Notes under the pieces: generated by a model
Databases searched by the model: none
What the model saw: the letters and a program-made list of their open reading frames with translations, nothing else
What the model was told of the DNA's origin: nothing
Shown: positions 3,001-27,506 of the stretch, one piece after another
How the letters are laid out: each line of letters begins with the position of its first letter
Numbering within the stretch: the stretch's first letter is position 1
Made by a program: the position numbers and the translations under genes
Source: Heptranchias perlo
Taxonomy: Eukaryota
DNA length: 34,552 nucleotides
NCBI RefSeq assembly: GCF_035084215.1
Contig: NC_090333.1
Span: forward strand, 83,638,001 to 83,672,552
Reading direction: 5' to 3'

Positions 3001-6000
3001 GGAGGGTGTACAAGTGATTGTTTTATATGGGGAGGGGGTTCAAGTGAGTGTTTTATATGGGGAGGGGGTGCAAGTGAGTGTTTTTTATGGGGAGGGTTTA
3101 CAAGTGAGTGTTTTATATGGGTTGGGGGTACAAGTGAGTGTTTTATATGGTGAGGGGTACAAGTGAGTGTTTTATATGGGGAGGGGGTACAAGTGAGTGT
3201 TTTATATGGTGAGGGGTACAAGTGAATGTTTTATATGGGGGGTACAAGTGAGTGTTTAATATTGGGACGGGGACCAGTGAGTGATTTATATGGGGAGGGG
3301 GTACAAATGATTGTTTTATATGGGGAGGGGGGACAAATAAGTGTTTTATATGGGGAGGGGGTACAAGTGAGTGTTTTATATGGGATGGGGTACAAGTGAG
3401 TGTTTTATATGGGGAGGGGCTACAAGTGAGTGTTTTATATGGGGAGGGGGTACAAGTGATTGTTTTATATGGGGAGGGGCTACAAGTGAGTGTTTTATAT
3501 GTGGAGGGGCTACAAGTGAGTGTTTTATATGGGTGGGTGCAAGTGAGTGTTTTATATGGGGAGGGGATACAAGTTAGTGTTTAATATGGGGAGGGGGGAC
3601 AAGTGAGTGTTTTATATGGGGAGGGGTACAAGTGAGTTTTTTATAAGGCAAGGGGGGACTAGTGAGTGTTTTTTATGGGGAGGTGGTCCAAGTGAGTGTT
3701 TTATATGGGGAGGGGTACAAGTGAGTGTTTTATGTGGGGAGGGGGTACAAGTGAGTGTTTTATATGTGGAGGGGGAACAAGTAAGTGTTTTATCTGGGGA
3801 GGGGTACAAGTGAGTGTTTTATATGGGGAGGGGGTACAAGTGAGTGTTTTATATGGGGAGGGGGGACAAGTAGTGTTTTATATGTGGGGGTACAAGTGAG
3901 TGTTTTATATGGGGAGGGGGTACAAGTGAGTGTTTTATATATGGATGGGGAACAAGTAAGTGTTTTATCTGGGGAGGGGTACAAGTGAGTGTTTTATATG
4001 GGGAGGGGCTACAAGTGAGTGTTTTATATGGGTGGGTGCAAGTGAGTGTTTTTATGGGGAGGGGATACAAGTTAGTGTTTTATATGGGGAGGGGGGACAA
4101 GTGAGTGTTTTATATGGGGAGGGGTACAAGTGAGTTTTTTATAAGGCAAGGGGGTACTAGTGAGTGTTTTTTATGGGGAGGTGGTCCAAGTGAGTGTTTT
4201 ATATGGGGACGGGGTACAAGTGAGTGTTTTATATGTGGAGGGGGTACAAGTGATTGTTTTATATGGGGAGGGGGTACAAGTGAGTGTTTTATGTGGGGAG
4301 GGGGTGCAAGTGAGTGTTTTTTATGGGGAGGGGTTTCAAGTGAGTGTTTTATATGGGGAGGGGGTACAAGTGAGTGTTTTATATGGGGAGGGGGTACAAG
4401 TGATTGTTTTACATGGGGAGGGGGTACAAGTGAGTGTTTTATATGGGGAGGGGTAAAAGTGAGTGTTTTAAATGGGAGGGGGGACAATTGATTGTTTTAT
4501 ATGGGGAGGGGTAAAAGTGAGTGTTTTATATGGAGAGGGGGTACAATTGAGTGTTTTATTTGGGGAGGGAGACAAGTGAGTGTTTTATTTGGGGAGGGGG
4601 TACAATTGAGTGTTTTATTTGGGGAGGGGGACATGTGAGTGTTTTATATGGGGAGGGGTACAAGTGAGTGTTTTATATGGGGAGGGGGTACAAGTGATTG
4701 TTTTATATGGGGAGGGGGTACAAGTGAGTGTTTTATTTGGGGAGGGGGTACAAGTGAGTGTTTTATATGGGGAGGGGGTACAAGTGAGTGTTTTACTTGG
4801 GGAGGGGGTACAAGTGAGTGTTTTATATGAGGAGGGTGTACAAGTGATTGTTTTATATGGGGAGGGGGTTCAAGTGAGTGTTTTATATGGGGAGGGGGTG
4901 CAAGTGAGTGTTTTATATGTGGGGGTACAAGTGAGTGTTTTATATGGGGAGGGGTACAAGTGAGTGTTTTATATGGGGAGGGGGTACAAGTGAATGTTTT
5001 ATATGGGGAGGGGGGACAAATGAGTGTTTTATATGGGGAGGGGGTACAAGTGAGTGTTTTATATGGGATGGGGACCAGTGAGTGATTTATATGGGGAGGG
5101 GGTACAAATGATTGTTTTATATGGGGAGGGGGGACAAATGAGTGTTTTATATGGGGAGGGGGGACAAATGAGTGTTTTATATGGGGAGGGGGTACAAGTG
5201 AGTGTTTTATATGGGATGGGGTACAAGTGAGTGTTTTATATGGGGAGTGGCTACAAGTGAGTGTTTTATATGGGGAGGGGATAAAAGTGAGTGTTTTATG
5301 TGTGGGGGTACAAGTGAGTGTTTTATATGGGGAGGGTGCACAAGTGAGTGTTTTATATGGGGAGGGGGGACAAATGAGTGTTTTATATGGGGAGGGGATA
5401 CAAGTGAGTGTTTTATATGGGGAGGGGGGACAAGTGAGTGTTTTATGTGAGGAGGGGTACAAGTGAGTTTTTTATAAGGCAAGGGGGTACTAGTGAGTGT
5501 TTTTTATGGGGAGGTGGTCCAAGTGAGTGTTTTATATGGGGAGGGGTACAAGTGAGTGTTTTATGTGGGGAGGGGGTACAAGTGAGTGTTTTATATGTGG
5601 AGGGGGTACAAGTCGTGTTTTATATGGGGAGGGGTACAAGTGAGTGTTTTCTATGGGGAGGGGGTACAAGTGAGTGTTTTATATGGGGTGGGGGGACAAG
5701 TAGTGTTTTATATGTGGGGGTACAACTGAGTGTTTTATATGGGGAGGGGGTACAAGTAAGTGTTTTATCTGGGGAGGGGTACAAGTGAGTGTTTTGTATG
5801 GGGAGGGGGTACAAGTGAGTGTTTTATCTGGGGAGGGGGTACAAGTGAGTGTTTTATATGGGGAGGGAGTACAAGTGAGTGTTTTATATGGGGAGGGGTA
5901 CAAGTGAGTGTTTTATATGGGGAGGGTGTACAAGTGAGTGTTTTATATGGGGAGGGGATACACGTGAATGTTCAAAATGGGGAGGGTTACAAGTGAGTGT

Positions 6001-9000
6001 TTTATTTGGGGAGGGGGGACAAGTAGTGTTTTATATGGGGAGGGGTACAAGTGAGTGTTTTGTATGGCGAGGGGTACAAGTGAGTGTTTTATATGTGGGG
6101 GTACAAGTGAGTGTTTTATCTGGGGAGGGGGTACAAGTGAGTGTTTTATATGGGGAGGGGGTAGAAGTGAGTGTTTTATATGGGGAGGGGGTACAAGTGA
6201 GTGTTTTATATGGGGAGGGGGTAGAAGTGAGTGTTTTATATGGGGAGGGGGTGCAAGTGAGTGTTTTATATGGGGAGGGGGTACAAGTGAGTGTTTTATA
6301 TGGGGAGGGGTTACAAGTGAGTGTTTTATATGGGGAGGGGGTACAAGTGAGTGTTTTTTATGGGGAGGGGTACCAATGAGTGTTTTTTATGGGGAGGTGG
6401 TCCAAGTGAGTGTTTTACATGGGGAGGGGGTATAAGTGAGTGTTTTATATGGGGAGGGGGTGCAAGTGAGTGTTTTATATGGGGAGGGGGTACAAGTGAG
6501 TGTTTTTTATGGGGAGGGGTACCAGTGAGTGTTTTTTATGGGGAGGTGGTCCAAGTGAGTGTTTTACATGGGGAGGGGGTACAAGTGAGTGTTTTATATG
6601 GGGAGGGGTTACAAGTGAGTGTTTTATATGGGGAGGGGTACAAGTGATTGTTTTATATGGGGAGGTGGTACAAGTGAGTGTTTTATATGGGGAGGGGGTA
6701 CATGTGAGTGTTTTCAATGGGGAGTGGTTACAAGTGAGTGTTTTATATGGGGAGGGGGTACAAGTGAGTGTTTTATATAGGGAGGGGATACAAGTGAGTG
6801 TTTTATATGGGGAGTGGGTACAAGTAGTGTTTTATATGGGGAGGGGTACAAGTGAGTGTTTTATATATGGATGGGGAACAAGTGAGTGTTTTATATGGGG
6901 AGAGGGTACAAGTGAGTGTTTTATATGGGGAGGGGATACAGGTGAATGTTCAAAATGGGGAGGGGGTACAAGTGAGTGTTTTATATTGGGAGGGGTACAA
7001 GTGAGTGTTTTATATGGGGAGGGGGTACAAGTAGTGTTTTATATGGGGAGGGGTACAAGTGAGTGTTTTATATGGGATGGGGTACAAGTGAGTGTTTTAT
7101 ATGGGGAGGGGGTACAAGTGAGTGTTTTATCTGGGGAGGGGGTACAAATGAGTGTTCTATATGGGGAGGGGGTACAAGTGAGTGTTTTATATGGGGAGGG
7201 GGTACAAGTAGAGTTTTATATGGGGAGGGGTACAAGTGAGTGTTTCATATGGGGATGTGGTACAAGTGAGTGTTTTATATATGGATGGGGAACAAGTGAG
7301 TGTTTTATATGGGGAGAGGGTACAAGTGAGTGTTTTATATTGGGAGGGGGTACAAGTGAGTGTTTTATATGGGGAGGGGGTACAAGTAGTGTTTTATATG
7401 GGGAGGGGGTACAAATGAGTGTTTTATATGGGGAGGGGTACAAGTGAGTGTTTTATATGGGGAGGGGTTACAAGTGAGTGTTTTATATGGGGAGTGGGTC
7501 CAAGTGAGTGTTCTATATGTGGAGGGGGTACAAGTACTGTTTTATATGGGGAGGGGTACAATTGAGTGTTTTATATGGGGAGGGGGGACACGTGATTGTT
7601 TTTCTGGGGAGGGGGTACACGTGAGTGTTTTATTTGGGGAGGTGGTACAAGTGAGTGTTTTATTTGGGGAGGGGGTACACGTGAATGTTTTATATGGGGA
7701 GGGGGTACAAGTGAGTGTTTTATATTGGGAGGGGGTACAAGTGAGTGTTTTATATGGGGAGGGGGGACAAGTAGTGTTTTATATGGGGAGGGGGTACAAG
7801 TGAGTGTTCTATATGGGGATGGGGTACAAGTGAGTGTTTTATATGGGGAGGGGTACAAGTGAGTGTTTTATATGGGGAGGGGATACACGTGAATGTTCAA
7901 AATGGGGAGGTGGTACAAGTGAATGTTTTATATTGGGAGGGGGTACAAGTGAGTGTTTTATATGGGGAGGGGCGACAAGTAGTGTTTTATATGGGGAGGG
8001 GGGACAAGTGAGTGTTTTGTCTGGGGAGGGGTACAAGTGAGTGTTTTATATGGGGAGGGGGTACAAGTGAGTGTTCTATATGTGGACGGGGTACAAGTAG
8101 TGTTTTATATAGGGAGGGGTACAATTGAGTGATTTATATGGGGAGGGGTACAAGTGACTGTTTAATATGGTGAGGGGGTACAAGTGAGTGTTTTATATGG
8201 GGAGGGGGTACACGTGATTGTTTTATATGGGGAGGGGGTACAAGTGAGTGTTTTATATGGGGAGGGGGTACACGTGATTGTTTTTCTGGGGAGGGGGTAC
8301 ACATGAGTATTTTAATTGAGGAGGGGGTACACGTGAATGTTTTATATGGGGAGGGGGTAAATGTGAGTGTTTTATATGGGGAGGGGTACAAGTGAGTGTA
8401 TTATATGGGGAGGGGGTACAAGTGATTGTTTTATTTGGGGAGGGGGTACAAGTGAGTGTTTTATATGGGGAAGGGGGAAACATGTGAGTGTTTTATATAG
8501 GGAGGGGGTACAAGTGAGTATTTTATATGGGGAGGGGGTACGAGAGATTGTTTTTTCTGGGGAGTGGGTACAAGTGAGTGTTTTATATGGGGAGGGGGTT
8601 CAAGTGAGTGTTTTATATGGGGAGGGGCTACATGTGAGTGTTTTATATGGGGAGGGGGTACAAGTGAGTGTTTTATATGGGGAGGGGGTACATGTGATTG
8701 TTTAATATTGGGAGGGTGTGCAAGTGAGTGTTTTATATGGGGAGGGGGTACAAGTGAGTGTTTTATATGGGGAGGGGGTACAAGTGAGTGTTTTATATGG
8801 GGAGGGGGTACAAGTGAGTGTTTTATATGGGGAGGGGGTACAAGTGAGTATTTTGTATGGGGAGGGGGTACAAGTGAGTGTTCAATATGGATGAGGGGGT
8901 ACTAGAGATTGTTTTATTTGGGGAGTGGGTACAAGTGGGTGTTTTATATGGGGAGGGGGTACATGTGAGTGTTTTATATTGGGAGGGGTACAAGTGAGTG

Positions 9001-9733
9001 TTTTATAATGGGAGAGGGTACACGTGATTGTTTTATATGGGGAGGGGGTACAAGTGAGTGTTTTATATGGGGAGGGGGTGCAAGTGAGTGTTTTATATGT
9101 GGAGGGGGTACAAGTCAGTGTTTTATATGGGGAGGGGGTACAAGTGATTGTTTTATATGGGGAGGGGGTACAAGTGAGTGTTTTATATGGGGAGGGGGTA
9201 CAAGTGATTGTTTTATATGGGGAGGGGGTACAAGTGATTGTTTCATATGGGGAGGGGGTACAAGTGAGTGTTTTATATGGGGAGGGGGTACAAGTGATTG
9301 TTTTATATGGGGAGGGGGTACAAGTGAGTGTTTTATATGGGGAGGGGGTACAAATGATTGTTTTATATGGGGAGTGGGTACAAGTGAGTGTTTTATATGG
9401 GAAGGGGGTACATGTGAGTGTTTTATATGGGGAGGGGGTACAAGTGAGTGTTTTATATGGGGAGGGGGTACAAGTGATTGTTTTATATGGGGAGGGGGTA
9501 CAAGTGAGTGTTTTATATGGGGAGGGGGTACAATTGAGTGTTTTATATGGGGAGGGGGTACAAGTGATTGTTTTATATGGGGAGGGGGTACAAGTGAGTG
9601 TTTTATATGGGGAGGAGGTACAAGTGATTGTTTTATATGGGGAGGGGGTACAAGTGATTGTTTTGTACGGGGAGGGGGTACAAGTGATTGTTTTATATAG
9701 GGAGGGGGTACAAGTGATTGTTTTGTACGGGGA
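1..9733 (+). repeat. ~30-bp minisatellite, consensus ATGGGGAGGGGGTACAAGTGAGTGTTTTAT (~325 copies; 27-29-bp deletion variants common; runs off the window start)
   Basis: Directly visible tandem periodicity; translates to repetitive 10-aa peptides (GEGVQVSVLY / WGGGTSECFI). Confidence 0.98.
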
Positions 9734-9829
9734 GTGTATTTCATACAAGACATGAGGTGTGATTTTGTTGTACAAGAGTACGTATGTTTTATAAATGGGC
9801 ATAACACACTCACACTCACATTCACTCAA

Positions 9830-10554
9830 GGGTGTGACTGAGTTATATGAGAGTGTGAGTGTTATTTATGAGGGTGTGAGTGTCTTATATGAGGGTTTGA
9901 ATTTGTTATGTCGGGGTATGAGTGTGTTATACGGGGGTGTGAGTTTGTCACATCGGTTTGTTAGAGTTTATATGGGGGTGTGAGTGTGTTTTATGGGGGT
10001 GTGAGTGTGTTATACTGGGTGTGTGTGTTTTGTACGAGGTGTGAGTGTTTTATACTGGGGTGTGTGTCTTTTATCCTGGGTGTGTGTGATTTATACGGGG
10101 TGTGAGTGTTTTGTACGAGGTGTGAGTGTTTTATACTGGGTGTGAGTGTTTTATACTGGGTGTGAGTGTTTTATACGGGGTGTGAGTGTTTTATACTGGG
10201 TGTGTGTGTTTTATACGGGGTGTGAGTGTTTTATACGGGCTGTGAGTGTTTTATACTGGGTGTGTGTGTTTTATATGGTGTGTGAGTGTTTTATGCTGGG
10301 GTGTGAGTGTTTTATACGTGGTGTGAGTGTTTTATACTGGGGTGTGAGTGTTTTAAACTGGGTTGTGTTTGTTTTATACGGGGTGTGAGTGTTTTATACT
10401 GGGGTGTGTGTGTTTTATTCGGGGTGTGAGTGTTTTATACTGGGTGTGAGTGTTTTATACTTTGTGTGAGTGTTTTATACGGGGTGTGAGTGTATTATAC
10501 TGGGGTGTGAGTGTTTTATACGGGGTGTGAGTGTATTATACTGGGGTGTGAGTG
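9830..10554 (+). repeat. 20/21-bp minisatellite, left arm (consensus C(T)GGGGTGTGAGTGTTTTATA), degenerate at 9830-10010
   Basis: Tandem units visible; same unit as the array right of the LINE. Confidence 0.95.
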
Positions 10555-10569
10555 TTTTTTTTTATTCGT

Positions 10570-13496
10570 TCACGGGATGTGGGCGTCGCTGGCGAGGCCA
10601 GCATTTATTGCCCATCCCGAATTGCCCTTGAGAAGGTGGTGGTGAGCCGCCTTCTTGAACCGCTGCAGTCCGTGTGGTGACGGTTCTCCCACAGTGCTGT
10701 TAGGAAGGGAGTTCCAGGATTTTGACCCAGCGACAATGAAGGAACGGCGATATATTTCCAAGTCGGGATGGTGTGTGACTTGGAGGGGAACGTGCAGGTG
10801 GTGTTGTTCCCATGTGCCTGCTGCTCTTGTCCTTCTAGGTGGTAGAGGTCGCTGGTTTTGGAGGTGCTGTCGAAGAAGCCTTGGCGAGTTGCTGCAGTGC
10901 ATCCTGTGGATGGTACACACTGCAGCCACAGTGCGCCGGTGGTGATGGGAGTGAATGTTTAGGGTGGTGGATGGGGTGCCAATCAAGCGGGCTGTTTTAT
11001 CTTGGATGGTGTCGAGCTTCTTGAGTGTTGTTGGAGCTGCACTCATCCAGGCAAGTGGAGAGTATTCCATCACACTCCTGACTTGTGCCTTGTAGATGGT
11101 AGAAAGGCTTTGGGGAGTCAGGAGGTGAGTCACTCGCCGCAGAATACCCAGCCTCTGACCTGCTCTTGTAGCCACAGTATTTATATGGCTGGTCCAGTTA
11201 AGTTTCTGGTCAATGGTGACCCCCAGGATGTTGATGGTGGGGGATTCGGTGATGGTAATGCCGTTGAATGTCAAGGGGAGGTGGTTGGACTCTCTCTTGT
11301 TGGAGATGGTCATTGCCTGGCACTTATCTGGCGCGAATGTTACTTGCCACTTATGAGCCCAAGCCTGGATGTTGTCCAGGTCTTGCTGCATGCGGGCTCG
11401 GATTGCTTCATTATTTGAGGGGTTGCGAATGGAACTGAACACTGTGCAGTCATCAGCGAACATCCCCATTTCTGACCTTATGATGGAGGGAAGGTCATTG
11501 ATGAAGCAGCTGAAGATGGTTGGGCCTAGGACACTGCCCTGAGGAACTCCTGCAGCAATGTCCTGAGGCTGAGATGATTGGCCTCCAACAACCACTACCA
11601 TCTTCCTTTGTGCTGGGTATGACTCCAGCCACTGGAGAGTTTTCCCACTGATTCCCATTGACTTCAATTTTACGAGGGCTCCTTGGTGCCACACTCGGTC
11701 AAATGCTGCCTTGATGTCAAGGGCAGTCACTCTCACCTCACCTCTGGAATTCAGCACTTTTGTCCATGTTTGGAACAAGGCTGTAATGAGGTCTGGAGCC
11801 GAGTGGTCCTGGCGGAACCCAAACTGAGCAGGTTGTTGGTGAGTAAGTGCCGCTTGATAGCACTGTCGACGACACCTTCCATCACTTTGCTGATGATTGA
11901 GAGTAGACTGATGGGGCGGTAATTGGCCGGATTGGATTTGTCCTGCTTTTTGTGGACAGAACATACCTGGGTAATTTTCCACATTGTCGGGTGGATGCCA
12001 GTGTTGTAGCTGTACTGGAACAGCTTGGCTGGAGGCGCAGACTAGTTCTGGAGCACAAGTCTTCAGCACGACAGCTGGGATGTTGTCGGGGCCCATAGCC
12101 TTTGCTGTATCCAGTGCACTCAGCCATTTCTTGATATCACGTGGAGTGAATCGAATTGGCTGAAGTCTGGCTTCTGTGATGGTGGGGATATCGGGAGGAG
12201 GCCAAGATGGATCATCCACTCGGCACTTCTGGCTGAAGATGGTTGCAAACGCTTCAGCCTTGTCTTTTGCACTCACCTGCTGGACTCCGCCATCATTGAG
12301 GATGGGGATGTTTGCAGAGCCTCCTCCTCCCGCTCGTTGTTGAATTGTCCACCACCATTCACGACTGGATGTGGCAGGACTGCAGAGCTTTGATCTGATC
12401 CGTTGGTTGTGGAATCGCTTCGCTCTGTCCATAGCATGTTGCTTCCGCTTTTTAGCATGCATGTAGTCGTGAGTTGTAGCTTCACCAGGTTGGCACCTCA
12501 TTTTTAGGTACGCCTGGTGCTGCTCCTGGCATGCTCTTCTGCACTCACTGATCGAACCAGGGTTGATCCGCTGGCTTGTTGGTAATGGTAGAGTGAGGAA
12601 TATGCCGGGCCATGAGGTTACAGATTGTGCTGGAATACAATTCTGCTGCTGATGGCCCACAGCGCCTCATGGATGCCCAGTTTTGAGCTGCTGGATCCAT
12701 TCTGAATCTATCCCATTTAACACGGTGGTCGTGCCACACAACACGTTGGATGGTGTCCTCAGTGCGAAGACAGGACTTCATCTCCACGAGGACTGTGCAG
12801 TGGTCACTCCTACCAATACTGTCATGAACAGATGCATTTGCGACAGGTAGATTGGTGAGGACGAGGTCAAGTAAGTTTTTCCCTCGTGTTGGTTCGCTCA
12901 CCACCTGCCGCAGGCCCAGTCTCGCAGCTATGTCCTTCAGGACTCGGCCAGCTCGGTCAGTATGCTGCCGAGCCATTCTTGGTGATGGACATTGAAGTCC
13001 CCCACCCAGACTACATTCTGTGCCCTTGCTACCCTCAGTGCTTCTCAACATGGAGGAGGACTGATTCATCAGCTGAGGGAGTGCGGTAGGTGGTAACCAG
13101 CAGGAGGTTTCCTTGCCCATGTTTGACCTGATGCCATGAGATTTCATGGGGTCCAGAGTCAATGTTGAGGACTCCCAGGGCCACTCCCTCCTTACTGTAT
13201 ATCACTGTACCACCACCTCTGGTGGGTCTGTCCTGCCGGTGGGACAGGACATACCCAGGGATGGTGATGGAATAGTCTGGGACGTTGGCTGAAAGATATG
13301 ATTCTGTGAGTATGGCGAGGTCAGGCTGTTGCTTGACGAGTCTGTGGGACAGTTCTCCCAATTTTGGCACAAGTCCCCAGATGTTCGTAAGGAGGACCTT
13401 GCACGGTCGACTGGGCTTGGTGTTTTGCCGTTGTCGTGTCCGGTGCCTGGTGGTCCGTCCGGTTTTATTCTTATTGTGACTTTTCGCAGCGACATT
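10570..13496 (-). pseudogene. Disrupted single EN-RT ORF of the LINE (frame changes near ~13040, ~12962, ~12550, ~12040, ~11828)
   Basis: Conserved motifs are distributed over ORFs 13035-13370, an unlisted frame carrying QNVVWVGDFNVHHQEWLGS (~12965-13020), 12545-13162, 10570-12660 and 11751-11984. The EN frame is open upstream to a TAA at ~13497-13499 with no ATG. Confidence 0.88.
10573..10619 (-). other. 3'-terminal nested stem-loop of the LINE (candidate RT-recognition structure)
   Basis: Inner hairpin, sense GCTGGC-CTC-GCCAGC (10588-10602); outer stem 10573-10584 pairs with 10610-10619 (2-nt bulge). Sense AATAAA at 10604-10609 and 10561-10566. 3' stem-loops are established for L2/CR1-type LINEs such as UnaL2 and ZfL2. 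Confidence 0.7.
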
Positions 13497-13745
13497 TTAC
13501 AACTGAGTGGCTTGCTGGGCCATTTCAGAGGGCAATTAAGTATCAACCACATTGCTGTGGGTCTGGAGTCACATCTCGGCCAGACCGGGGAAGGACGGCA
13601 GGTTTCCATTCAAAAAGGTCATGAGTGAACCAGATGGGTTTTTACGACAATCTGGTCGTTTCATGGTCATCATTACTGATACTAGCATTTTAATTCCAGA
13701 TTTTAATTTAATTAATTGAATTTAAATTCACCAGCTGCTGCAGCA

Positions 13746-13828
13746 GGATTTGAACTCATGATTCTTGGATTTTAGTCCAGGCCTCTGCATAACTAGTCCA
13801 GTAACATAACCACTATGCGACCGTACTC
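13746..13828 (-). promoter_or_regulatory. tRNA-derived head with RNA polymerase III type-2 internal promoter (A box and B box)
   Basis: Sense 5'-GAGTACGG-TCGCATAGTGG: A box at 13810-13820, one mismatch to TRGCNNARYGG, starting at nt 9 of the element, close to the tRNA position. Anticodon-arm relic CTGGA-CTAGTTA-TGCAG. B box GAGTTCAAATCC at 13746-13757. Confidence 0.8.
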
Positions 13829-16800
13829 TTATACTGGGTGTGAGTGTTTTATACTGGGGTGTGAGTGTTTTAAACTGGGGTGTGAGTGTTTTATCCTGGG
13901 GTGTGAGTGTTTTATCCTGGGGTGTGAGTGTTTTTTGCGAGGTGTGTGTGTTTTAAACTGGGGTGTGAGTGTTTTATACTGGGGTGTGTGTGTTTTATAC
14001 TGGGGTGTGAGTGTTTTATACGAGGTGTGACTGTTTTATACTGGGTGTGAGTGTTTTATACGAGATGTGAGTGGTTTATACGGGGTGTGAGTGTTTTATA
14101 CTGGGGTGTGAGTGTTTTATACTGGGTGTGAGTGTTTTATACGAGGTGTGAGTGTTTTATACTGGGGTGTGAGTGTTTTATACGAGGTGTGAGTGTTTTA
14201 TACTGGGGTGTGAGTGTTTTATACGGGGTGTGAGTGTTTTATGCTGGGGTGTGAGTGTTTTATACTGGGTGTGTGTGCATTACACTGGGTGTGAGTGTTT
14301 TATACTGGGGTGTGAGTGTTTTATCCGAGGTGTGACTGTTTTATCCGGGGTGTGAGCGTTTTTTGCTGGGTGTGAGTGTTTTATACGGGGTGTGAGTGTT
14401 TTATATGGGGTGTGAGTGTTTTATACTGGGGTGTGAGTGTTTTATACTGGGGTGTGAGTGTTTTATACTGGGTGTGAGTGTTTTATACTGGGTGTGAGTG
14501 TTTTACACTGGGGTGTGAGTGTTTTATACGGGGTGTGAGTGTTTTATACTGGGTGTGTGTGTTTTACACTGGGTGTGAGTGTTTTATACGGGGTGTGAGT
14601 GTTAAATACGGGGTGTGAGTGTTTTATACTGGGTGTGAGTGTTTTATACGAGGTGTGTGTGTTTTATACTGGGGTGTGAGTGTTTTATACTGGGGTGTGA
14701 GTGTTTTATACTGGGTGTCTGTGTTTTACACTGGGGTGTGAGCGTTTTATACTGGGTATGAGTGTTTTATACGAGGTGTGAGTGTTTTATACTGGGGTGT
14801 GTGTGTTTTATACTGGGGTGTGAGTGTTTTATATTGGGGTGTGTGTGTTTTATACTGGGGTGTGAGTGTTTTATACGGGGTGTGAGTGTTTTATACTGGG
14901 GTGTGAGTGTTTTATATTGGGGTGTGTGTGTTTTATACTGGGGTGTGAGTGTTTTATACGGGGTGTGAGTGTTTTATACTGGGTGTGAGTGTTTTATACT
15001 GGGGTGTGAGTGTTTCATAATGGGGTGTGAGTGTTTTATACTGGGTGTGAGTGTTTTACACTGGGGTGTGAGCGTTTTATACTGGGTGTGAGTGTTTTAT
15101 ACGAGGTGTGTGTGTTTTACACTGGGGTGTGAGCGTTTTATACGGGGTGTGAGTGTTAAATACGGGGTGTGAGTGTTTTATACTGGGTGTGAGTGTTTTA
15201 TACGGGGTGTGAGTGTTTTATACTGGGTGTGAGTGTTTTATACTGGGTGTGTGTGTTTTACACGGGGGTGTGAGTGTTTTATCCGGGGTGTGAGTGTTTT
15301 ATACGGGGTGTGAGTGTTTTATACGGGGTGTGAGTGTTTTATACTGGGGTGTGTGTGTTTTATACTGGGGTGTGTGTGTTTTATACTGGGGTGTGAGTGT
15401 TTTATACTGGGTGTGAGTGTTTTATACGGGGTGTGAGTGTTTTATACGAGGTGTGTGTGTTTTACACTGGGGTTTGAGTGTTTTATACTGGGTGTGAGTG
15501 TTTTATACTGGGGTGTGAGTGTTTTACACTGGGGTGTGAGTGTTTTATACTGGGTGTGAGTGTTTTATACGAGGTGTGTGTGTTTTACACTGGGGTGTGA
15601 GTGTTTTATACTGGGGTGTGAGTGTTTTATACTGGGTGTGAGTGTTTTATACGAGGTGTGTGTGTTTTATACGGGGTGTGAGTGTTTTATACGGGGTGTG
15701 AGTGTTTTATACGAGGTGTGTGTGTTTTATACGGGGTGTGAGTGTTTTATACTGGGTGTGAGTGTTTTATACGAGGTGTGTGTGTTTTATACGGGGTGTG
15801 AGTGTTTTATACGGGGTGTGAGTGTTTTATACGGGGTGTGAGTGTTTTATACTGGGGTGTGAGTGTTTTATACGGGGTGTGAGTGTTTTATACTGGGGTG
15901 TGAGTGTTTTATACTGGGTGTGTGTGTTTTACACTGGGTGTGAGTGTTTTATACGGGGTGTGAGTGTTTTATACTGGGTGTGAGTGTTTTATACTGGGGT
16001 GTGAGTGTTTTATACTGGGGTGTGTGTGTTTTATACTGGGTGTGAGTGTTTTATACGGGGTGTGAGTGTTTTATACTGGGTGTGAGTGTTTTATACTGGG
16101 GTGTGAGTGTTTTATACTGGGGTGTGTGTGTTTTACACTGGGTGTGAGTGTTTTATACGGGGTGTGAGTGTTTTATACTGGGTGTGAGTGTTTTATACTG
16201 GGGTGTGAGTGTTTTATACTGGGGTGTGTGTGTTTTATACTGGGTGTGAGTGTTTTATACGGGGTGTGAGTGTTTTATACTGGGTGTGAGTGTTTTATAC
16301 TGGGGTGTGAGTGTTTTATACTGGGGTGTGTGTGTTTTATACTGGGGTGTGTGTGTTTTATACGGGGTGTGAGCGTTTTATACTGGGTGTGAGTGTTTTC
16401 TACGAGGTGTGTGTGTTTTACACTGGGGTGTGAGCGTTTTATACGGGGTGTGAGTGTTAAATACGGGGTGTGAGTGTTTTATACTGGGTGTGAGTGTTTT
16501 ATACGGGGTGTGAGTGTTTTATACTGGGTGTGAGTGTTTTATACTGGGTGTGTGTGTTTTACACGGGGGTGTGAGTGTTTTATCCGGGGTGTGAGTGTTT
16601 TATCCGGGGTGTGAGTGTTTTATACTGGGGTGTGTGTGTTTTATACTGGGGTGTGAGTGTTTTATACTGGGGTGTGAGTGTTTTATACTGGGTGTGAGTG
16701 TTTTATACGGGGTGTGAGTGTTTTATACGAGGTGTGTGTGTTTTACACTGGGGTGTGAGTGTTTTATACTGGGTGTGAGTGTTTTATACGGGGTGTGAGT

Positions 16801-19800
16801 GTTTTATACTGGGTGTGAGTGTTTTATACTGGGTGTGAGTGTTTTATACGAGGTGTGTGTGTTTTACACTGGGGTGTGAGTGTTTTATACTGGGGTGTGA
16901 GTGTTTTATACTGGGTGTGAGTGTTTTATACGGGGTGTGAGTGTTTTATACGAGGTGTGTGTGTTTTATACGGGGTGTGAGTGTTTTATACTGGGTGTGA
17001 GTGTTTTATACGAGGTGTGTGTGTTTTATACGGGGTGTGAGTGTTTTATACGGGGTGTGAGTGTTTTATACGGGGTGTGAGTGTTTTATACTGGGGTGTG
17101 AGTGTTTTATACTGGGTGTGTGTGTTTTACACTGGGTGTGAGTGTTTTATACGGGGTGTGAGTGTTTTATACTGGGGTGTGAGTGTTTTATACGGGGTAT
17201 GAGTGTTTTCTACTGGGGTGTGTGTGTTTTATACTGGGTGTGAGTGTTTTATACTGGGGTGTGAGTGTTTTATACTGGGGTATGAGTGTTTTATACTGGG
17301 GTGTGAGTGTTTCATACGGGGTGTGAGTGTTTTATACGGGGTGTGAGTGTTTTATACTGGGGTGTGAGTGTTTTACACTGGGTGTGAGTGTTTTATACGA
17401 GGTGTGTGTGTTTTACACTGGGGTGTGAGCGTTTTATACGGGGTGTGAGTGTTTTATACTGGGGTGTGAGTGTTAAATACGGGGTGTGAGTGTTTTATCC
17501 GGGGTGTGAGCGTTTTATACTGGGTGTGAGTGTTTTATACGGGGTGTGAGTGTTTTATACGGGGTGTGAGTGTTTTATACGGGGTGTGAGTGTTTTATAC
17601 TGGGGTGTGAGTATTTTATACGGGGTGTGAGTGTTTTATACTGGGGTGTGAGTGATTTATACTGGGGTGTGAGTGTTTTATACTGGGGTGTGTGTGTTTT
17701 ATACTGGGGTGTGAGTGTTTTATACTGGGGTGTGAGTGTTTTATACTGGGGTGTGAGTGTTTTATACTGGGTGTGAGTGTTTTATACGAGGTGTGTGTGT
17801 TTTATACGGGGTGTGAGTGTTTTATACTGGTAGTGAGTGTTTTATACGAGGTGTGAGTGTTTTATACTGGGTGTGAGTGTTTTATACTGGGTGTGAGTGT
17901 TTTATACTGGGGTGTGAGTGTTTTATACGGGGTGTGAGTGTTTTATACTGGGTGTGAGTGTTTTATACTGGGTGTGAGTGTTTTATACTGGGGTGTGAGT
18001 GTTTTATACGGGGTGTGAGTGTTTTATACTGGGTGTGAGTGTTTTATACTGGGTGTGAGTGTTTTATACTGGGGTGTGTGTGTATTATACGGGGTGTGTG
18101 TGTTTTATACGGGGTGTGAGTGTTTTATACGGGGTGTGAGTGTTTTATACGGGGTGTGAGTGTTTTATACGGGGTGTGAGTGTTTTATACTGGGGTGTGA
18201 GTGTTTTATACTGGGTGTGAGTGATTTATAGGGGTGTGTGTGTTTTATACTGGGGTGTGAGTGTTTTATACTGGGTGTGAGTGTTTTCTACTGGGGTGTG
18301 AGTGTTTTATACTGGGTGTGAGTGTTTTATAGGGGTGTGTGTGTTTTATACTGGGGTGTGAGTGTTTTATACTGGGTGTGAGTGTTTTCTACTGGGGTGT
18401 GTGTGTTTTATACTGGGTGTGAGTGTTTTATAATGGGTGTGAGTGTTTTATACTGGGGTATGAGTGTTTTATACTGGGGTGTGAGTGTTTCATACGGGGT
18501 GTGAGTGTTTCATACGGGGTGTGAGTGTTTCATACTGGGGTGTGAGTGTTTTATACGGGGTGTGAGTGTTTTATACGGGGTGTGAGTGTTTTATGCTGGG
18601 GTGTGAGTGTTTTATACGGGGTGTGAGTGTTTTATACTGGGGTGTGAGTGTTTTATACGGGGTGTGAGTGTTTTATACTGGGGTGTGAGTGTTTTATACT
18701 GGGGTGTGAGTGTTTTATACGGGGTGTGAGTGTTTTATACGGGGTGTGAGTGTTTTATACTGGGGTGTGAGTGTTTTATACTGGGGTGTGAGTGTTTTAT
18801 ACGGGGTGTGAGTGTTTTATACGGGGTGTGAGTGTTTTATACTGGGGTGTGAGTGTTTTATACTGGGTGTGAGTGTTTTATACGAGGTGTGTGTGTTTTA
18901 TACGGGGTGTGAGTGTTTTATACGGGGTGTGAGTGTTTTATATGGGGTGTGAGTGTTTTATACTGGGGTGTGAGTGTTTTATACGGGGTGTGAGTGTTTT
19001 ATACTGGGGTGTGAGTGTTTTATACGGTGTGTGAGTGTTTTATAGTGGGTGTGAGTGTTTTATACGGGGTGTGAGTGTTTTATACGGGGTGTGAGTGTTT
19101 TATACTGGGGTGTGAGTGTTTTATACTGGGTGTGTGTGTTTTACACTGGGTGTGAGTGTTTTATACGGGGTGTGAGTGTTTTATACGGGGTGTGAGTGTT
19201 TTATACGGGGTGTGAGTGTTTTATACGGGGTGTGAGTGTTTTATACGAGGTGTGAGTGTTTTATACGGGGTGTGAGTGTTTTATACTGGGTGTGTATGTT
19301 TTACACTGGGTGTGAGTGTTTTATACGGGGTGTGAGTGTTTTATACGGGGTGTGAGTGTTTTATACTGGGTGTGAGTGTTTTATACGAGGTGTGTGTGTT
19401 TTACACTGGGTGTGAGTGTTTTATACGGGGTGTGAGTGTTTTATACTGGGTGTGTATGTTTTACACTGGGTGTGAGTGTTTTATACGGGGTGTGAGTGTT
19501 TTATACTGGGTGTGAGTGTTTTATACTGGGGTGTGAGTGTTTTATCCGGGGTGTGAGCGTTTTTTGCTGGGTGTGAGTGTTTTATACGGGGTGTGAGTGT
19601 TTTATACTGGGGTGTGAGTGTTTTATACTGGGTGTGAGTGTTTTATACTGGGTGTGAGTGTTTTATACGAGGTGTGTGTGTTTTACACTGGGGTGTGAGT
19701 GTTTTATACTGGGGTGTGAGTGTTTTATACTGGGTGTGAGTGTTTTATACGAGGTGTGTGTGTTTTATACGGGGTGTGAGTGTTTTATACGGGGTGTGAG

Positions 19801-22800
19801 TGTTTTATACTGGGGTGTGAGTGTTTTATACGGGGTGTGAGTGTTTTATACTGGGGTGTGAGTGTTTTATACTGGGTGTGTGTGTTTTACACTGGGTGTG
19901 AGTGTTTTATACGGGGTGTGAGTGTTTTATACGGGGTGTGAGTGTTTTATCCTGGGTGTGTGTGTTTTACACTGGGGTGTGAGTGTTTTATACTGGGGTG
20001 TGAGTGTTTTATACTGGGTGTGAGTGTTTTATACGGGGTGTGAGTGTTTTATACGAGGTGTGTGTGTTTTATACGGGGTGTGAGTGTTTTATACTGGGTG
20101 TGAGTGTTTTATACTGGGTGTGAGTGTTTTATACGAGGTGTGTGTGTTTTATACGGGGTGTGAGTGTTTTATACGGGGTGTGAGTGTTTTATACGGGGTG
20201 TGAGTGTTTTATACTGGGGTGTGAGTGTTTTATACTGGGTGTGTGTGTTTTACACTGGGTGTGAGTGTTTTATACGGGGTGTGAGTGTTTTATACTGGGG
20301 TGTGAGTGTTTTATATGGGGTATGAGTGTTTTCTACTGGGGTGTGTGTGTTTTATACTGGGTGTGAGTGTTTTATACTGGGGTGTGAGTGTTTTATACTG
20401 GGGTATGAGTGTTTTATACTGGGGTGTGAGTGTTTCATACGGGGTGTGAGTGTTTTATACGGGGTGTGAGTGTTTTATACTGGGGTGTGAGTGTTTTACA
20501 CTGGGTGTGAGTGTTTTATACGAGGTGTGTGTGTTTTACACTGGGGTGTGAGCGTTTTATACGGGGTGTGAGTGTTTTATACTGGGGTGTGAGTGTTAAA
20601 TACGGGGTGTGAGTGTTTTATCCGGGGTGTGAGCGTTTTATACTGGGTGTGAGTGTTTTATACGGGGTGTGAGTGTTTTATACGGGGTGTGAGTGTTTTA
20701 TACGGGGTGTGAGTGTTTTATACTGGGGTGTGAGTATTTTATACGGGGTGTGAGTGTTTTATACTGGGGTGTGAGTGATTTATACTGGGGTGTGAGTGTT
20801 TTATACTGGGGTGTGTGTGTTTTATACTGGGGTGTGAGTGTTTTATACTGGGGTGTGAGTGTTTTATACTGGGGTGTGAGTGTTTTATACTGGGTGTGAG
20901 TGTTTTATACGAGGTGTGTGTGTTTTATACGGGGTGTGAGTGTTTTATACTGGTAGTGAGTGTTTTATACGGGGTGTGAGTGTTTTATACGGGGTGTGAG
21001 TGTTTTATACGGGGTGTGAGTGTTTTATACTGGGTGTGAGTGTTTTATACTGGGTGTGAGTGTTTTATACTGGGGTGTGTGTGTATTATACGGGGTGTGT
21101 GTGTTTTATACGGGGTGTGAGTGTTTTATACGGGGTGTGAGTGTTTTATACGGGGTGTGAGTGTTTTATACGGGGTGTGAGTGTTTTATACTGGGGTGTG
21201 AGTGTTTTATACTGGGTGTGAGTGATTTATAGGGGTGTGTGTGTTTTATACTGGGGTGTGAGTGTTTTATACTGGGTGTGAGTGTTTTCTACTGGGGTGT
21301 GAGTGTTTTATACTGGGTGTGAGTGTTTTATAGGGGTGTGTGTGTTTTATACTGGGGTGTGAGTGTTTTATACTGGGTGTGAGTGTTTTCTACTGGGGTG
21401 TGTGTGTTTTATACTGGGTGTGAGTGTTTTATAATGGGTGTGAGTGTTTTATACTGGGGTATGAGTGTTTTATACTGGGGTGTGAGTGTTTCATACGGGG
21501 TGTGAGTGTTTTATACTGGGGTGTGAGTGTTTTATACTCGGGTGTGAGTGTTTTATACTCGGGTGTGAGTGTTTTATACGGGGTGTGAGTGTTTTATACG
21601 GGGTGTGAGTGTTTTATACTGGGGTGTGAGTGTTTTATACTGGGGTGTGAGTGTTTTATACGGGGTGTGAGTGTTTTATACGGGGTGTGAGTGTTTTATA
21701 CGGGGTGTGAGTGTTTTATACTGGGGTGTGAGTGTTTTATACTGGGGTGTGAGTGTTTTATACGGGGTGTGAGTGTTTTATACGGGGTGTGAGTGTTTTA
21801 TACTGGGGTGTGAGTGTTTTATACTGGGTGTGAGTGTTTTATACGAGGTGTGTGTGTTTTATACGGGGTGTGAGTGTTTTATACGGGGTGTGAGTGTTTT
21901 ATATGGGGTGTGAGTGTTTTATACTGGGGTGTGAGTGTTTTATACGGGGTGTGAGTGTTTTATACTGGGGTGTGAGTGTTTTATACGGTGTGTGAGTGTT
22001 TTATAGTGGGTGTGAGTGTTTTATACGGGGTGTGAGTGTTTTATACGGGGTGTGAGTGTTTTATACTGGGGTGTGAGTGTTTTATACTGGGTGTGTGTGT
22101 TTTACACTGGGTGTGAGTGTTTTATACGGGGTGTGAGTGTTTTATACGGGGTGTGAGTGTTTTATACGGGGTGTGAGTGTTTTATACGGGGTGTGAGTGT
22201 TTTATACGAGGTGTGAGTGTTTTATACGGGGTGTGAGTGTTTTATACTGGGTGTGTATGTTTTACACTGGGTGTGAGTGTTTTATACGGGGTGTGAGTGT
22301 TTTATACTGGGTGTGAGTGTTTTATACGAGGTGTGTGTGTTTTACACTGGGTGTGAGTGTTTTATACGGGGTGTGAGTGTTTTATACTGGGTGTGTATGT
22401 TTTACACTGGGTGTGAGTGTTTTATACGGGGTGTGAGTGTTTTATACTGGGTGTGAGTGTTTTATACTGGGGTGTGAGTGTTTTATCCGGGGTGTGAGCG
22501 TTTTTTGCTGGGTGTGAGTGTTTTATACGGGGTGTGAGTGTTTTATACTGGGGTGTGAGTGTTTTATACTGGGGTGTGAGTGTTTTATACTGGGTGTGAG
22601 TGTTTTATACTGGGTGTGAGTGTTTTATACGAGGTGTGTGTGTTTTATGCGGGGTGTGAGTGTTTTATACTGGGTGTGAGTGTTTTATACTGGGTGTGAG
22701 TGTTTTATACTGGGTGTGAGTGTTTTATACGAGGTGTGTGTGTTTTATACGGGGTGTGAGTGTTTTATACGGTGTGTGAGTGTTTTATAGTGGGTGTGAG

Positions 22801-25800: not shown

Positions 25801-26620
25801 GTGAGTGTTTTATACGGGGTGTGAGTGTTTTATACGGGGTGTGAGTGTTTTATACGGGGTGTGAGTGTTTTATACTGGGGTGTGAGTGTTTTATACTGGG
25901 GTGTGAGTGTTTTATACTGGGGTGTGAGTGTTTTATACGGGGTGTGAGTGTTTTATACGGGGTGTGAGTGTTTTATGCTGGGTGTGAGTGTTTTATACGG
26001 GGTGTGAGTGTTTTATACGGGGTGTGAGTGTTTTATATGGGGTGTGAGTGTTTTATACGGGGTGTGTGTGTTTTATACTGGGGTGTGTGTATTTTATACT
26101 GGGGTGTGAGTGTTTTATACGGGGTGTGTGTGTTTTATACTGGGGTGTGAGTGTTTTATACGGGGTATGAGTGTTTTATACTGGGGTGTGAGTGTTTTAT
26201 ACGGGGTGTGAGTGTTTTATACTGGGGTGTGAGTGTTTTATACTGGGGTGTGAGTGTTTTATACGGGGTGTGAGTGTTTTATGCTGGGTGTGAGTGTTTT
26301 ATACGGGGTGTGAGTGTTTTATACGGGGTGTGAGTGTTTTATATGGGGTGTGAGTGTTTTATACGGGGTGTGAGTGTTTTATACTGGGGTGTGAGTGTTT
26401 TATACTGGGGTGTGAGTGTTTTATACGGGGTGTGAGTGTTTTATACGGGGTGTGAGTGTTTTATACTGGGGTGTGAGTGTTTTATACTGGGGTGTGAGTG
26501 TTTTATACAGGGTGTGAGTGTTTTATACTGGGGTGTGAGTGTTTTATACGGGGTGTGAGTATTTTATACGGGGTGTGAGTGTTTTATACGGGGTGTGAGT
26601 GTTTTATACGGGGTGTGTGT
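13829..26620 (+). repeat. 20/21-bp minisatellite, main arm (~630 copies; units CGGGGT-, CTGGGT-, CTGGGGT-, CGAGGT- + GTGAGTGTTTTATA)
   Basis: Direct tandem periodicity with internal higher-order duplications. Confidence 0.98.
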
Positions 26621-26813
26621 GTTTAATATAAGATGGTGTTTCCCAGTATATTTTATACACTGTGAGGTTTGATGAACACGGTCAGAGGGGATCAGTTCTC
26701 TGTTCTTTGATGTGAGCCTCCCATGACTGTCGCAGTGACTCAGACTGCAGTGCTGTTGTTCTCTGTCAGGAGTCTTGCATCACCAGGTTATAGTCCAACA
26801 GCTTTATTTAAAA

Positions 26814-26850
26814 TCACAAGCTTTCGGAGGCTTCCTCCTTCGTCAGGTGA
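26814..26850 (-). ncRNA. Minimal type I hammerhead ribozyme (PLE-associated)
   Basis: Sense TCAC-CTGACGA-A-GGAGG-AAG-CCTCC-GAAA-GC-TT-GTGA: stem I TCAC/GTGA, core CUGANGA, 5-bp stem II, GAAA, palindromic minimal stem III (AAGCTT). Confidence 0.85.
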
Positions 26851-27028
26851 GTGTGGGATTCCATGAAAGGTACTGCATATCTGGTCAGAGAACAATTCCT
26901 GGTGATTGCAGATAATCTTTCCAACTGCCCGTAATCAAGGCAATCAAAGGAGTTGAATAGTGTTCAGACAGAGAGACATTACATTCAAGACTACTGAATA
27001 TATAAACGGTCAGAACCCAAAGACAGAT

Positions 27029-27047
27029 AGAGAGAGAGAGAGAGAGA
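27029..27047 (+). repeat. (AG)n microsatellite within the PLE 3' region
   Basis: agagagagagagagagaga. Confidence 0.9.
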
Positions 27048-27344: not shown

Positions 27345-27506
27345 TATGCATCAGCGGCCTCTCTGCCCCGTCCCTAATCTGCCTGTTCTCTCCTGAAGTC
27401 TTTGACAGTTCTCCTCTCTGTTTGCCAAACCTCTCCTTTTGTGCAGTCAGCACATTCCGATTCTCATGCTCCCTCTGCCCAAGTCCAAATCATCGATATA
27501 TATCAG

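What the first reader, a model, noticed from the sequence alone, without database searches (positions are those of the whole stretch)
10564..13611. Sense strand of the LINE lacks TTTT Pol III terminators over ~3 kb
Seen (manual scan): no run of >=4 A on the + strand (sense TTTT) in 10564-13611, and only about five AAA runs, versus roughly 20 runs of >=4 T (sense AAAA) across the element. The only sense T-run is T5 at 13612-13616 in the 5' UTR. Nearby PLE and L2 fragments do contain sense T4-T5 runs. Established: vertebrate Pol III terminates at >=4 T. Inference: selection against Pol III terminators inside a coding sequence, independent support for Pol III transcription. Caveats: LINE sense strands are generally T-poor, and the T5 would terminate Pol III in this copy unless it is a post-insertion mutation.
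Basis: partly seen in the sequence, partly recalled or inferred. Interest (0 to 1): 0.82.

Follow-up and report, generated by a model that had tools for sequence, protein, structure and literature searches.

The report
T-run-poor sense strand of LINE
The 3-kb coding strand of this retrotransposon copy has no TTTT, but that alone is about what its base and codon make-up predicts, so it adds little support to the idea that RNA polymerase III transcribes the element; the real oddity is a lineage-specific shortage of TT and TTT.

Summary
The counts are correct. On the + strand, 10564-13611 has no A4, five AAA runs and 18 T4+ runs. The only sense T-run is the T5 at 13612-13616.

The element is one minus-strand CR1/Jockey-type LINE copy (10556-13828). 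It encodes APE and RT, is frameshifted, has no ORF1, and sits inside a 20-bp satellite.

Absence of TTTT is not significant. About 1.7-2.2 are expected under dinucleotide, codon-order and synonymous shuffles (P(0)=0.08-0.16). Over the whole element the figure is 1 against 2.3.

What is real is a 2.4-fold shortage of TTT runs (5 against about 12, P about 0.002):
- T|T at codon junctions is half of expectation.
- None of 29 TT-starting codons follows a T-ending codon.
- Phe is TTC 17, TTT 3.
- 53 related LINE ORFs from other hosts show nothing like it.

Purging T4 alone would still leave about 11 TTT runs (P=0.007). The shortage therefore has another cause, and given that cause, zero T4 is unremarkable.

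In this copy the T5 lies 213-217 nt from the 5' end and would stop Pol III. Whether the family shares it is unresolved.

The Pol III reading is neither excluded nor strengthened. No same-genome control was available.

The parts
10556..13828 (-). One LINE copy (3273 nt) that interrupts a 20-bp satellite without changing the phase of the array
   Evidence: Sequence read; satellite arrays 9830-10558 and 13829-26628; flanks of other copies diverge at 10555 and 13826 (loose ends)
10564..13611 (-). Stretch with no sense TTTT and only five sense TTT runs (the finding)
13612..13616 (-). Sense T5, 213-217 nt from the 5' end of the element and 3 nt upstream of an ATG (13609); the only T4+ run in the element
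13735..13828 (-). 5' head called tRNA-like: box A-like GCATAGTGG at 13810-13818 and box B-like AGTTCAAATCC at 13746-13756. tRNA detectors do not recognise it
   Evidence: sequence; box B with 2 mismatches, not above chance; ARAGORN and Rfam: no tRNA, even at E<=10 on 151 nt
13421..13734 (-). A-rich 5' UTR, shared with short SINE-like forms of the family; TT is at expectation here (18 against 16.5)
   Evidence: joints
12549..13420 (-). Endonuclease (APE) part of the ORF, read in three frames in this copy (breaks near 13040 and 12962)
   Evidence: Pfam Exo_endo_phos_2 on 12791-13105; three-frame reading
11212..11984 (-). Reverse transcriptase domain, with frame breaks near 12041 and 11830
   Evidence: Pfam RVT_1, E=1e-29; 1054 homologues with E<=1e-10
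10556..10572 (-). Stop codon (10570-10572) and tail ACGAATAAAAAAAAA, with AATAAA at 10561-10566; there is no T-run terminator
13292..13294 (-). Sense TTT across a codon junction (CTT|TCA)
12247..12249 (-). Sense TTT, a Phe codon
11821..11823 (-). Sense TTT, the Phe codon of the QFGF motif
11701..11703 (-). Sense TTT, the Phe codon of the AAFD motif
11103..11105 (-). Sense TTT across a codon junction (CTT|TCT)

Best explanation
The TTTT-free 3 kb is a by-product of how this LINE's open reading frame is written. It is not a separate signature of terminator avoidance.

The sense strand is T-poor: 19.5 % overall, 14 % at codon position 1 and 20 % at position 3. C-ending codons are preferred. T next to T is avoided, above all across codon junctions and in the choice of TTC over TTT for Phe. 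That leaves only 5 TTT runs, and with 5 such runs, having no TTTT is unremarkable (about 0.37, from the shuffles' share of T3+ runs that reach T4).

Shown here: the counts, the shuffle results, and the contrast with relatives.

Inferred: the cause of the TT/TTT shortage. I think it most likely reflects selection on the long coding RNA or its translation, meaning codon and codon-pair usage and avoidance of U-tracts in general. Pol III terminators as such are a less likely cause, because TT and TTT do not terminate vertebrate Pol III and purging T4 alone cannot produce the pattern.
For: - T4 expectation is only 1.7-2.2 under dinucleotide, codon-order and synonymous shuffles, P(0)=0.08-0.16. Over the whole element it is 1 against 2.33, P=0.31.
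- TTT runs: 5 against 12.2-12.4, P=0.0014-0.002.
- Among 2324 synonymous shuffles that happen to have no T4, TTT runs still average 11.0 (sd 2.45), and P(<=5)=0.007.
- T|T junctions: 13 against 25.8. TT-starting codons after NNT: 0 of 29 (5.7 expected, P=0.0017). NTT followed by T: 2 of 43 (6.0 expected). Phe TTC:TTT is 17:3 (P=0.034).
- A, C and G runs are at expectation in the codon-aware shuffles.
- In the 408-nt head plus 5' UTR, TT is 22 against 22.6, and this is where the only T5 lies.
- None of the 40 best-supported family-versus-copy differences would create a sense T-run of 3 or more, so the pattern belongs to the family and not to the decay of this copy.
Against: - 53 related LINE ORFs show no such avoidance: TTT obs/exp has median 0.99 and minimum 0.74; T|T junction has median 0.92 and minimum 0.62; T|TT has minimum 0.58. 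The trait is therefore special to this lineage, and some selective cause tied to its peculiar biology, Pol III included, stays possible.
- No host coding sequence or other LINE from the same genome was available, so host codon-pair usage is untested.
- The contrast between UTR and ORF rests on few TT counts and is not significant by itself.
- The frames were set by eye on a frameshifted copy, although the frame-free dinucleotide shuffle agrees.
Confidence: 0.55

Rival explanations
1. The LINE is transcribed from its tRNA-like head by RNA polymerase III, and lineages that acquired T4 or longer in the sense strand were truncated and lost. The ORF has therefore been kept free of terminators, and the T5 in this copy is a private or minority change.
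For: - There is no T4 over 3048 nt, whereas related LINE ORFs carry a median of 8 T4 per kb and only 1 of 53 has none.
- The head sits at the extreme 5' end. Its box A-like motif lies 10 nt from the end and a box B-like motif about 52 nt further on.
- Contig depth over the head is about equal to that over the LINE 5' region, and flanks diverge at 13826, so the head belongs to full-length family members.
- Short forms join the head and 5' UTR to the 3' tail (joints at 10618-10669 to 13495-13559). They carry the T5 position internally, which argues that an active Pol III SINE would not have T5 there (inference).
- Depth at 13608-13610 is far below that at neighbouring places, so this copy may be atypical there.
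- Unchecked first-reader notes report two further headed, ORF1-less copies without TTTT.
Against: - T4 absence is not significant given composition.
- The depletion is at TT and TTT, which T4 purging does not explain (P=0.007).
- The T5 at +213-217 would terminate Pol III in this copy, and it is not among the listed private differences.
- ARAGORN and Rfam find no tRNA in the head, and the box B match is not above chance.
- The tail carries AATAAA and an A-run, and no T-run terminator.
- From general knowledge: Pol III transcripts are uncapped and poorly translated. In the papers I searched and read I found no Pol III-driven autonomous LINE.
Confidence: 0.15
2. U-tract avoidance in a Pol II-made LINE mRNA. 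T-tracts on the non-template strand destabilise Pol II. U-rich stretches also serve as downstream elements of cleavage sites, as polypyrimidine tracts of cryptic 3' splice sites, and as binding sites for U-tract proteins. An intronless 3-kb retrotransposon RNA would benefit from lacking them.
For: - The depletion is graded (TT, TTT, T4) and not a cut-off at T4.
- AATAAA sits at the 3' end.
- Pure yeast Pol II terminates spontaneously at T-tracts (PMC7615648, abstract).
Against: - Related LINEs, presumably Pol II-transcribed, show no avoidance.
- Three ATTAAA and one AATAAA lie inside the 5' UTR, so processing signals are not generally purged.
Confidence: 0.12
3. Strand-specific mutation bias of the copying cycle. 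Transcription and reverse transcription errors such as U to C and G to A accumulate over many rounds and erode T-runs on the sense strand.
For: The sense strand shows C>G and A>T skews (29.4 against 23.3 %, and 27.8 against 19.5 %). This is the direction expected from wobble-type mispairs during first-strand synthesis (inference from general knowledge).
Against: - The non-coding head and UTR, copied by the same enzymes, have TT at expectation (small sample).
- Relatives with similar enzymes show no depletion.
- The depletion is concentrated at codon junctions and in Phe codon choice.
Confidence: 0.08
4. Chance. The pattern was picked post hoc from many possible compositional oddities of one sequence.
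For: - Under a first-order Markov model TTT (z=-2.76) is only the third most deviant of 64 trinucleotides, after CCC (-3.84) and TAG (-3.04).
- The region limits were chosen to exclude the T5.
Against: - Codon-aware P is 0.0014-0.002.
- Three partly independent measures all fall outside the range of 53 relatives.
- The family letters agree with the pattern.
Confidence: 0.1

Closest known systems
CR1/Jockey-type non-LTR retrotransposons (LINEs)
   Same: - APE and RT domains in one ORF (Pfam).
- RT homologues that sources name 'mobile element jockey'.
- A C-terminal region with the WNSLP motif.
- A steep 3'-to-5' copy-number gradient from 5' truncation.
   Different: - No ORF1, and only 3.27 kb long.
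- The tail is AATAAA plus an A-run. From my own knowledge, CR1 tails are usually short microsatellite-like repeats.
- The 5' end carries a head with box A/B-like motifs.
- The ORF avoids TT and TTT, unlike 53 relatives.
[quoted passage not shown]
   Same: Contigs of four runs contain short forms that join the head and 5' UTR (to about 13498) directly to the last 60-110 nt of the LINE. This is the bipartite layout described in that paper.
   Different: - In the published cases the head is on the SINE only, and the examples named in the passages I read are RTE-type (Vingi appears in a figure legend). Here the full-length LINE carries the head too.
- The paper supposes that bipartite LINE derivatives are Pol II transcripts and that a template switch adds the head.
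Small-RNA/LINE chimeric insertions made by template switching (U6/L1, tRNA/L1; PMC13174262)
   Same: A small-RNA-like sequence is fused to the 5' side of a LINE within one insertion.
   Different: Those are single events with a few to 21 loci per RNA type, and the tRNA parts are mostly half-length and antisense. Here the head is in sense orientation and as abundant as the LINE 5' end across at least four organisms.
Pol III type 2 transcription units and T+ SINEs that carry AATAAA and a terminator in the tail (PMC8466645, PMC12101331 abstracts)
   Same: Box A/B-like motifs near the 5' end; AATAAA and an A-rich tail.
   Different: Those units are a few hundred nt long, non-coding, and have a T-run terminator in the tail. 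This element is 3.27 kb, coding, has no tail terminator, and in this copy has a T5 at +213.

Membership tests
CR1/Jockey-type LINE | Apurinic-type endonuclease domain followed by a reverse transcriptase domain on one strand | tested here: met
   Pfam Exo_endo_phos_2 (E=4e-4, below the gathering score) and RVT_1 (E=1e-29); APE motifs read
CR1/Jockey-type LINE | RT sequence groups with that clade | tested here: inconclusive
   1054 homologues with E<=1e-10, some named 'mobile element jockey' by their sources. No tree with reference clades was built.
CR1/Jockey-type LINE | ORF1 upstream of ORF2 | tested here: not met
   Only about 410 nt lie upstream of the APE start; no second long ORF with a family match
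CR1/Jockey-type LINE | Dispersed high-copy family with 5'-truncated members | tested here: met
   Depth falls about 20-fold from the 3' to the 5' end in DNA runs of three organisms
Pol III type 2 (tRNA/SINE-like) transcription unit | tRNA-derived head with box A and box B | tested here: inconclusive
   GCATAGTGG lies at +11 to +19 and AGTTCAAATCC at +73 to +83. The box B match has 2 mismatches and is not above chance (30 found, 46 expected). ARAGORN and Rfam find no tRNA.
Pol III type 2 (tRNA/SINE-like) transcription unit | No run of T4 or longer between the start site and the functional 3' end | tested here: not met
   T5 at +213 to +217 in this copy. The 3048 nt downstream are free of T4. 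The family state of the T5 is unresolved.
Pol III type 2 (tRNA/SINE-like) transcription unit | T4 depletion beyond what composition gives | tested here: not met
   P(0)=0.16, 0.10 and 0.08 under dinucleotide, codon-order and synonymous shuffles
Pol III type 2 (tRNA/SINE-like) transcription unit | Transcripts made by Pol III (inhibitor sensitivity, POLR3/TFIIIC occupancy, 5'-triphosphate ends) | not testable with these tools
   Only assembled contigs were available for the RNA-labelled runs. They show no ends, strand or polymerase.
SINE/LINE pair with shared ends | Short non-coding form that shares the LINE's 3' tail (and here also its 5' end) | tested here: met
   Joints at 10618-10669 to 13495-13559 in contigs of all four runs. 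An unchecked note describes a 232-nt SINE sharing both ends.

The most novel reading that the evidence does not exclude
An autonomous, ORF1-less LINE family whose only promoter is a tRNA-derived Pol III head. Its 3-kb coding RNA is made by Pol III, the ORF has been kept free of T4 terminators for that reason, and the T5 in this copy is a dead-copy or minority variant. The strong TT/TTT avoidance would then be partly an adaptation to a polymerase that pauses or leaks at short T-runs.
Probability: 0.13. Interest if true: 0.88.

Novelty: new variant of a known kind. Interest (0 to 1): 0.4.

Why it matters
A protein-coding, autonomous retrotransposon driven by RNA polymerase III would be without precedent in the papers I found. 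It would change how the origin of SINE/LINE partnerships is seen.

This report shows that the T4-free ORF cannot carry that claim. It is expected from composition about one time in ten, and the underlying bias is of a different kind. What remains is a clean, testable oddity: a very successful vertebrate LINE lineage avoids TT and TTT in its coding strand far more than its relatives do.

Finding the cause would say something about the constraints on long intronless retrotransposon RNAs. The candidates are host codon-pair usage, U-tract avoidance, or the polymerase.

Tried and rejected
- Exact-pattern scans for the 5' UTR domain and the 3' tail found nothing in viral contigs or genome contigs. 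No second full copy was therefore in hand, and the family state of the T5 could not be read directly.
- blastn and tblastn found no other fragment of this family, and no relative of its RT, in 26001-34552 of the window. The ORFs of the other non-satellite pieces have no Pfam match. They could not be oriented or used as same-genome LINE controls.
- ARAGORN and Rfam gave no tRNA for the head.
- tblastn with homologues ran straight through the out-of-frame stretch, so I set the frames by eye.
- I rejected self-target avoidance (a LINE endonuclease nicking T-rich sites). It would not be strand-specific, and the antisense strand has 18 T4+ runs.
- I rejected APOBEC- or ADAR-type editing as the cause, because those change G or A on the sense strand and not T.
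The family letters were inspected only in their local context.
Full report
**What is there**

The window is mostly G+T-rich satellite: a 30-bp unit at 1-9734 and a 20-bp unit at 9830-10558 and 13829-26628. A single 3273-nt insertion on the minus strand, 10556-13828, interrupts the 20-bp array without disturbing its phase. A target-site duplication cannot be told apart from one satellite unit.

Read 5' to 3' on the sense strand, the insertion has these parts:
- A 94-nt head with a box A-like GCATAGTGG at +11 and a box B-like AGTTCAAATCC at +73.
- An A-rich 5' UTR.
- A T5 at +213 to +217 (13616-13612), followed by an ATG at 13609.
- An APE endonuclease part (Pfam Exo_endo_phos_2).
- A reverse transcriptase (RVT_1, E=1e-29).
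- A stop codon at 10570-10572 and the tail ACGAATAAAAAAAAA.

There is no ORF1. The copy is broken by frame changes near 13040, 12962, 12548, 12041 and 11830 (the indel rows at 12041 and 12547 and the loose ends at 11830 and 12962 mark four of these places).

**The family**

The RT has 1054 homologues with E<=1e-10, some of them named 'mobile element jockey' by their sources. It is a CR1/Jockey-type LINE.

Contigs from DNA runs of three organisms, and from one RNA-labelled run, were laid on the element. They show several things:
- The family is enormous, with hundreds of thousands of contigs laid.
- Depth falls about 20-fold from the 3' to the 5' end, the signature of 5' truncation.
- The head is about as abundant as the LINE 5' region.
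- Flanks diverge at 10555 and 13826, so these are the true ends.
- Short forms exist that join the head and 5' UTR (to about 13498) directly to the last 60-110 nt.

That last layout is the bipartite SINE structure described by Kojima 2018 (PMC5786205), except that here the LINE itself also carries the head. Unchecked first-reader notes on other pieces of this genome mention two more headed, ORF1-less copies of 3247 and 3275 nt without TTTT, and a 232-nt SINE sharing both ends. I could not read those sequences.

**The observation**

The + strand of 10564-13611 has no A4, five AAA runs, and 18 T4+ runs. Positions 13612-13616 are A5.

**Is the absence of TTTT more than chance?**

Not once composition is respected. 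The sense strand is 19.5 % T.

| Null model | Expected T4+ | P(0) |
|---|---|---|
| Mononucleotide shuffle | 3.5 | 0.022 |
| Dinucleotide shuffle | 1.71 | 0.16 |
| Codon-order permutation | 2.0 | 0.10 |
| Synonymous-codon shuffle | 2.2 | 0.08 |

The codon-aware shuffles used six in-frame segments totalling 945 codons. The region was also delimited just after the T5. Over the whole element there is one T4+ against 2.33 expected (P=0.31), and a T4-free stretch this long has P=0.12.

**What is more than chance**

The shortage of TTT is real.
- There are 5 runs against 11.5 (dinucleotide, P=0.005) and 12.2-12.4 (codon-aware, P=0.0014-0.002).
- A, C and G runs are at expectation in the codon-aware shuffles.
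- Three of the five TTT are conserved Phe codons. Only two span a codon junction.
- At junctions T|T is 13 against 25.8.
- None of the 29 TT-starting codons follows a T-ending codon (5.7 expected, P=0.0017).
- Only 2 of 43 NTT codons precede a T (6.0 expected).
- Phe is TTC 17, TTT 3, against 36 % T among C/T-ending codons overall (P=0.034).

There are caveats. Under a plain first-order Markov model TTT is only the third most deviant trinucleotide, after CCC and TAG. The pattern was also picked post hoc.

**Is it the decay of this copy?**

No. Of the 40 best-supported places where this copy differs from nearly all other copies, none of the family letters would create a sense T-run of 3 or more. 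Three of the sense A4/A5 runs are private to this copy. Only 40 of 364 variable places were visible.

**Is it ordinary for such LINEs?**

No, as far as I could test. A metagenome scan with an RT alignment returned 80 related loci. 53 of them have an ORF of at least 1.2 kb.

| Measure | 53 relatives | This element |
|---|---|---|
| TTT obs/exp, synonymous shuffle | median 0.99, minimum 0.74 | 0.41 |
| T|T junction obs/exp | median 0.92, minimum 0.62 | 0.50 |
| T|TT obs/exp | minimum 0.58 | 0 |
| Phe TTT share minus overall T share | minimum -0.17 | -0.21 |
| T4 runs | median 8 per kb; one ORF of 53 has none | none in 3 kb |

The controls are from other, mostly AT-richer hosts. No LINE or gene from the same genome was available.

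The remaining non-satellite DNA of the window carries T4 and A4 runs on both strands. It could not be identified or oriented.

**Does the pattern fit Pol III terminator avoidance?**

Only loosely. Vertebrate Pol III needs T4 or more (established knowledge). TT and TTT are not terminators.

If the only force were loss of lineages that acquire T4, the result would resemble sequences conditioned on having no T4. Among 2324 such synonymous shuffles, TTT runs average 11.0 (sd 2.45), and 5 or fewer occurs with P=0.007. The TT/TTT shortage therefore needs another cause.

Given only five TTT runs, having none extended to T4 is unremarkable: about 0.37, using the shuffles' share of T3+ runs that reach T4. 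The T4-free stretch adds essentially nothing beyond the TTT shortage.

The non-coding head and UTR show TT at expectation (22 against 22.6) and hold the only T5. This is a small sample and only suggestive. It hints that the avoidance belongs to the coding part and not to the whole transcript.

**The T5**

In this copy a Pol III transcript started at the head would end after about 215 nt. Its family status is unresolved.

Two hints point to a shared state or give no answer:
- It is not among the listed private differences, which would argue that it is shared.
- The only listed variants at the site are rare contigs lacking one or four letters, which settles nothing.

Two hints point to an atypical state in this copy:
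- Depth at 13608-13610 is 50 to 1000 times lower than at neighbouring places in all four runs. The same is seen at 12547-12553, where this copy has a cluster of private changes.
- The short SINE-like forms contain this position internally. If they are active Pol III units they should not carry a T5 there. This is inference.

**The premise of a tRNA-derived head**

It rests on motif resemblance only. ARAGORN and Rfam find no tRNA, even at E<=10 on 151 nt. The box B match with two mismatches is not above chance in this window. An anticodon-like stem-loop can be drawn by eye, with one mismatch.

**Rival causes for T-run avoidance**

- T-tracts also destabilise Pol II (PMC7615648, yeast). U-tracts serve in cleavage, splicing and protein binding.
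- A strand-specific copying bias could contribute. The C>G and A>T skews point that way, but the UTR and the relatives speak against it.
- Host codon-pair usage is untested.

**Compared with what is known**

The element is a CR1/Jockey-type LINE. It has three unusual traits: no ORF1, a SINE-type head shared with a bipartite short partner, and a lineage-specific TT/TTT avoidance in the ORF.

tRNA/LINE chimeras are known as rare single events, mostly antisense and half-length (PMC13174262). SINE heads are thought to be added to bipartite LINE derivatives by template switching (PMC5786205). A head-bearing full-length LINE family was not described in the papers I read.

**Verdict**

- The second criterion (ordinary LINEs) is passed only against foreign relatives.
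- The third criterion (the T5) is open.
- I put the Pol III cause at about 0.15, and the compositional or coding by-product reading at about 0.55.

**Limits and compliance**

Noticed in passing
window 10618-10669 joined to 13495-13559 (contigs of runs X1, X5, X10, X15): Short forms of the family join the head and 5' UTR directly to the last 60-110 nt of the LINE, at several different junctions, some with extra letters between. These are SINE-like or internally deleted partners that share both ends with the LINE.
   Followed up: partly
window 13537-13647: In organisms B and D this 110-nt bin (the CCGTCCTT...GTGACTCCAGACCCACAGCAATGTGG domain) is 3-5 times deeper than the bins on either side. It may be shared with another, more abundant repeat in those species. 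Organism A shows no such bump.
   Followed up: no
window 13202-13609, minus strand: An open 135-codon frame starts at the ATG 3 nt after the T5. It runs in a different frame from the APE start (about 13420) and has no Pfam match. It is unclear whether it is the true ORF start disrupted by a frameshift or a chance opening.
   Followed up: partly
window 10556-10572: The element ends in AATAAA plus A9, a Pol II-type polyadenylation signal and A-tail. From my own knowledge CR1-type LINEs usually end in a short microsatellite. Loose ends at 10555 confirm that this is the family's 3' end.
   Followed up: partly
window 1-9734, 9830-10558 and 13829-26628: Two related, strongly G+T-skewed satellites with units of 30 bp and 20 bp fill about 23 kb of the window. 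The LINE sits within the 20-bp array, about 0.7 kb from its low-coordinate end, and array phase is preserved across the insertion.
   Followed up: partly
window 28217-29186, 30890-32172, 32281-34552: Further tandem arrays with units of 58 bp and 43 bp, and a long G/A-rich low-complexity tract, lie between decayed repeat fragments that have no Pfam match.
   Followed up: no
runs X1-X14 (organisms A-E): Half to three quarters of the element's 31-letter words occur in DNA runs of at least five differently labelled organisms. Either the family is very young or these genomes diverge very slowly.
   Followed up: no
window 27111-27341 and 27763-28161, minus strand: The same peptide string (SRPIQLSNAPLARLPSSTLIQNS) appears in two ORFs about 700 nt apart. 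This suggests two fragments or a duplication of one old repeat.
   Followed up: no
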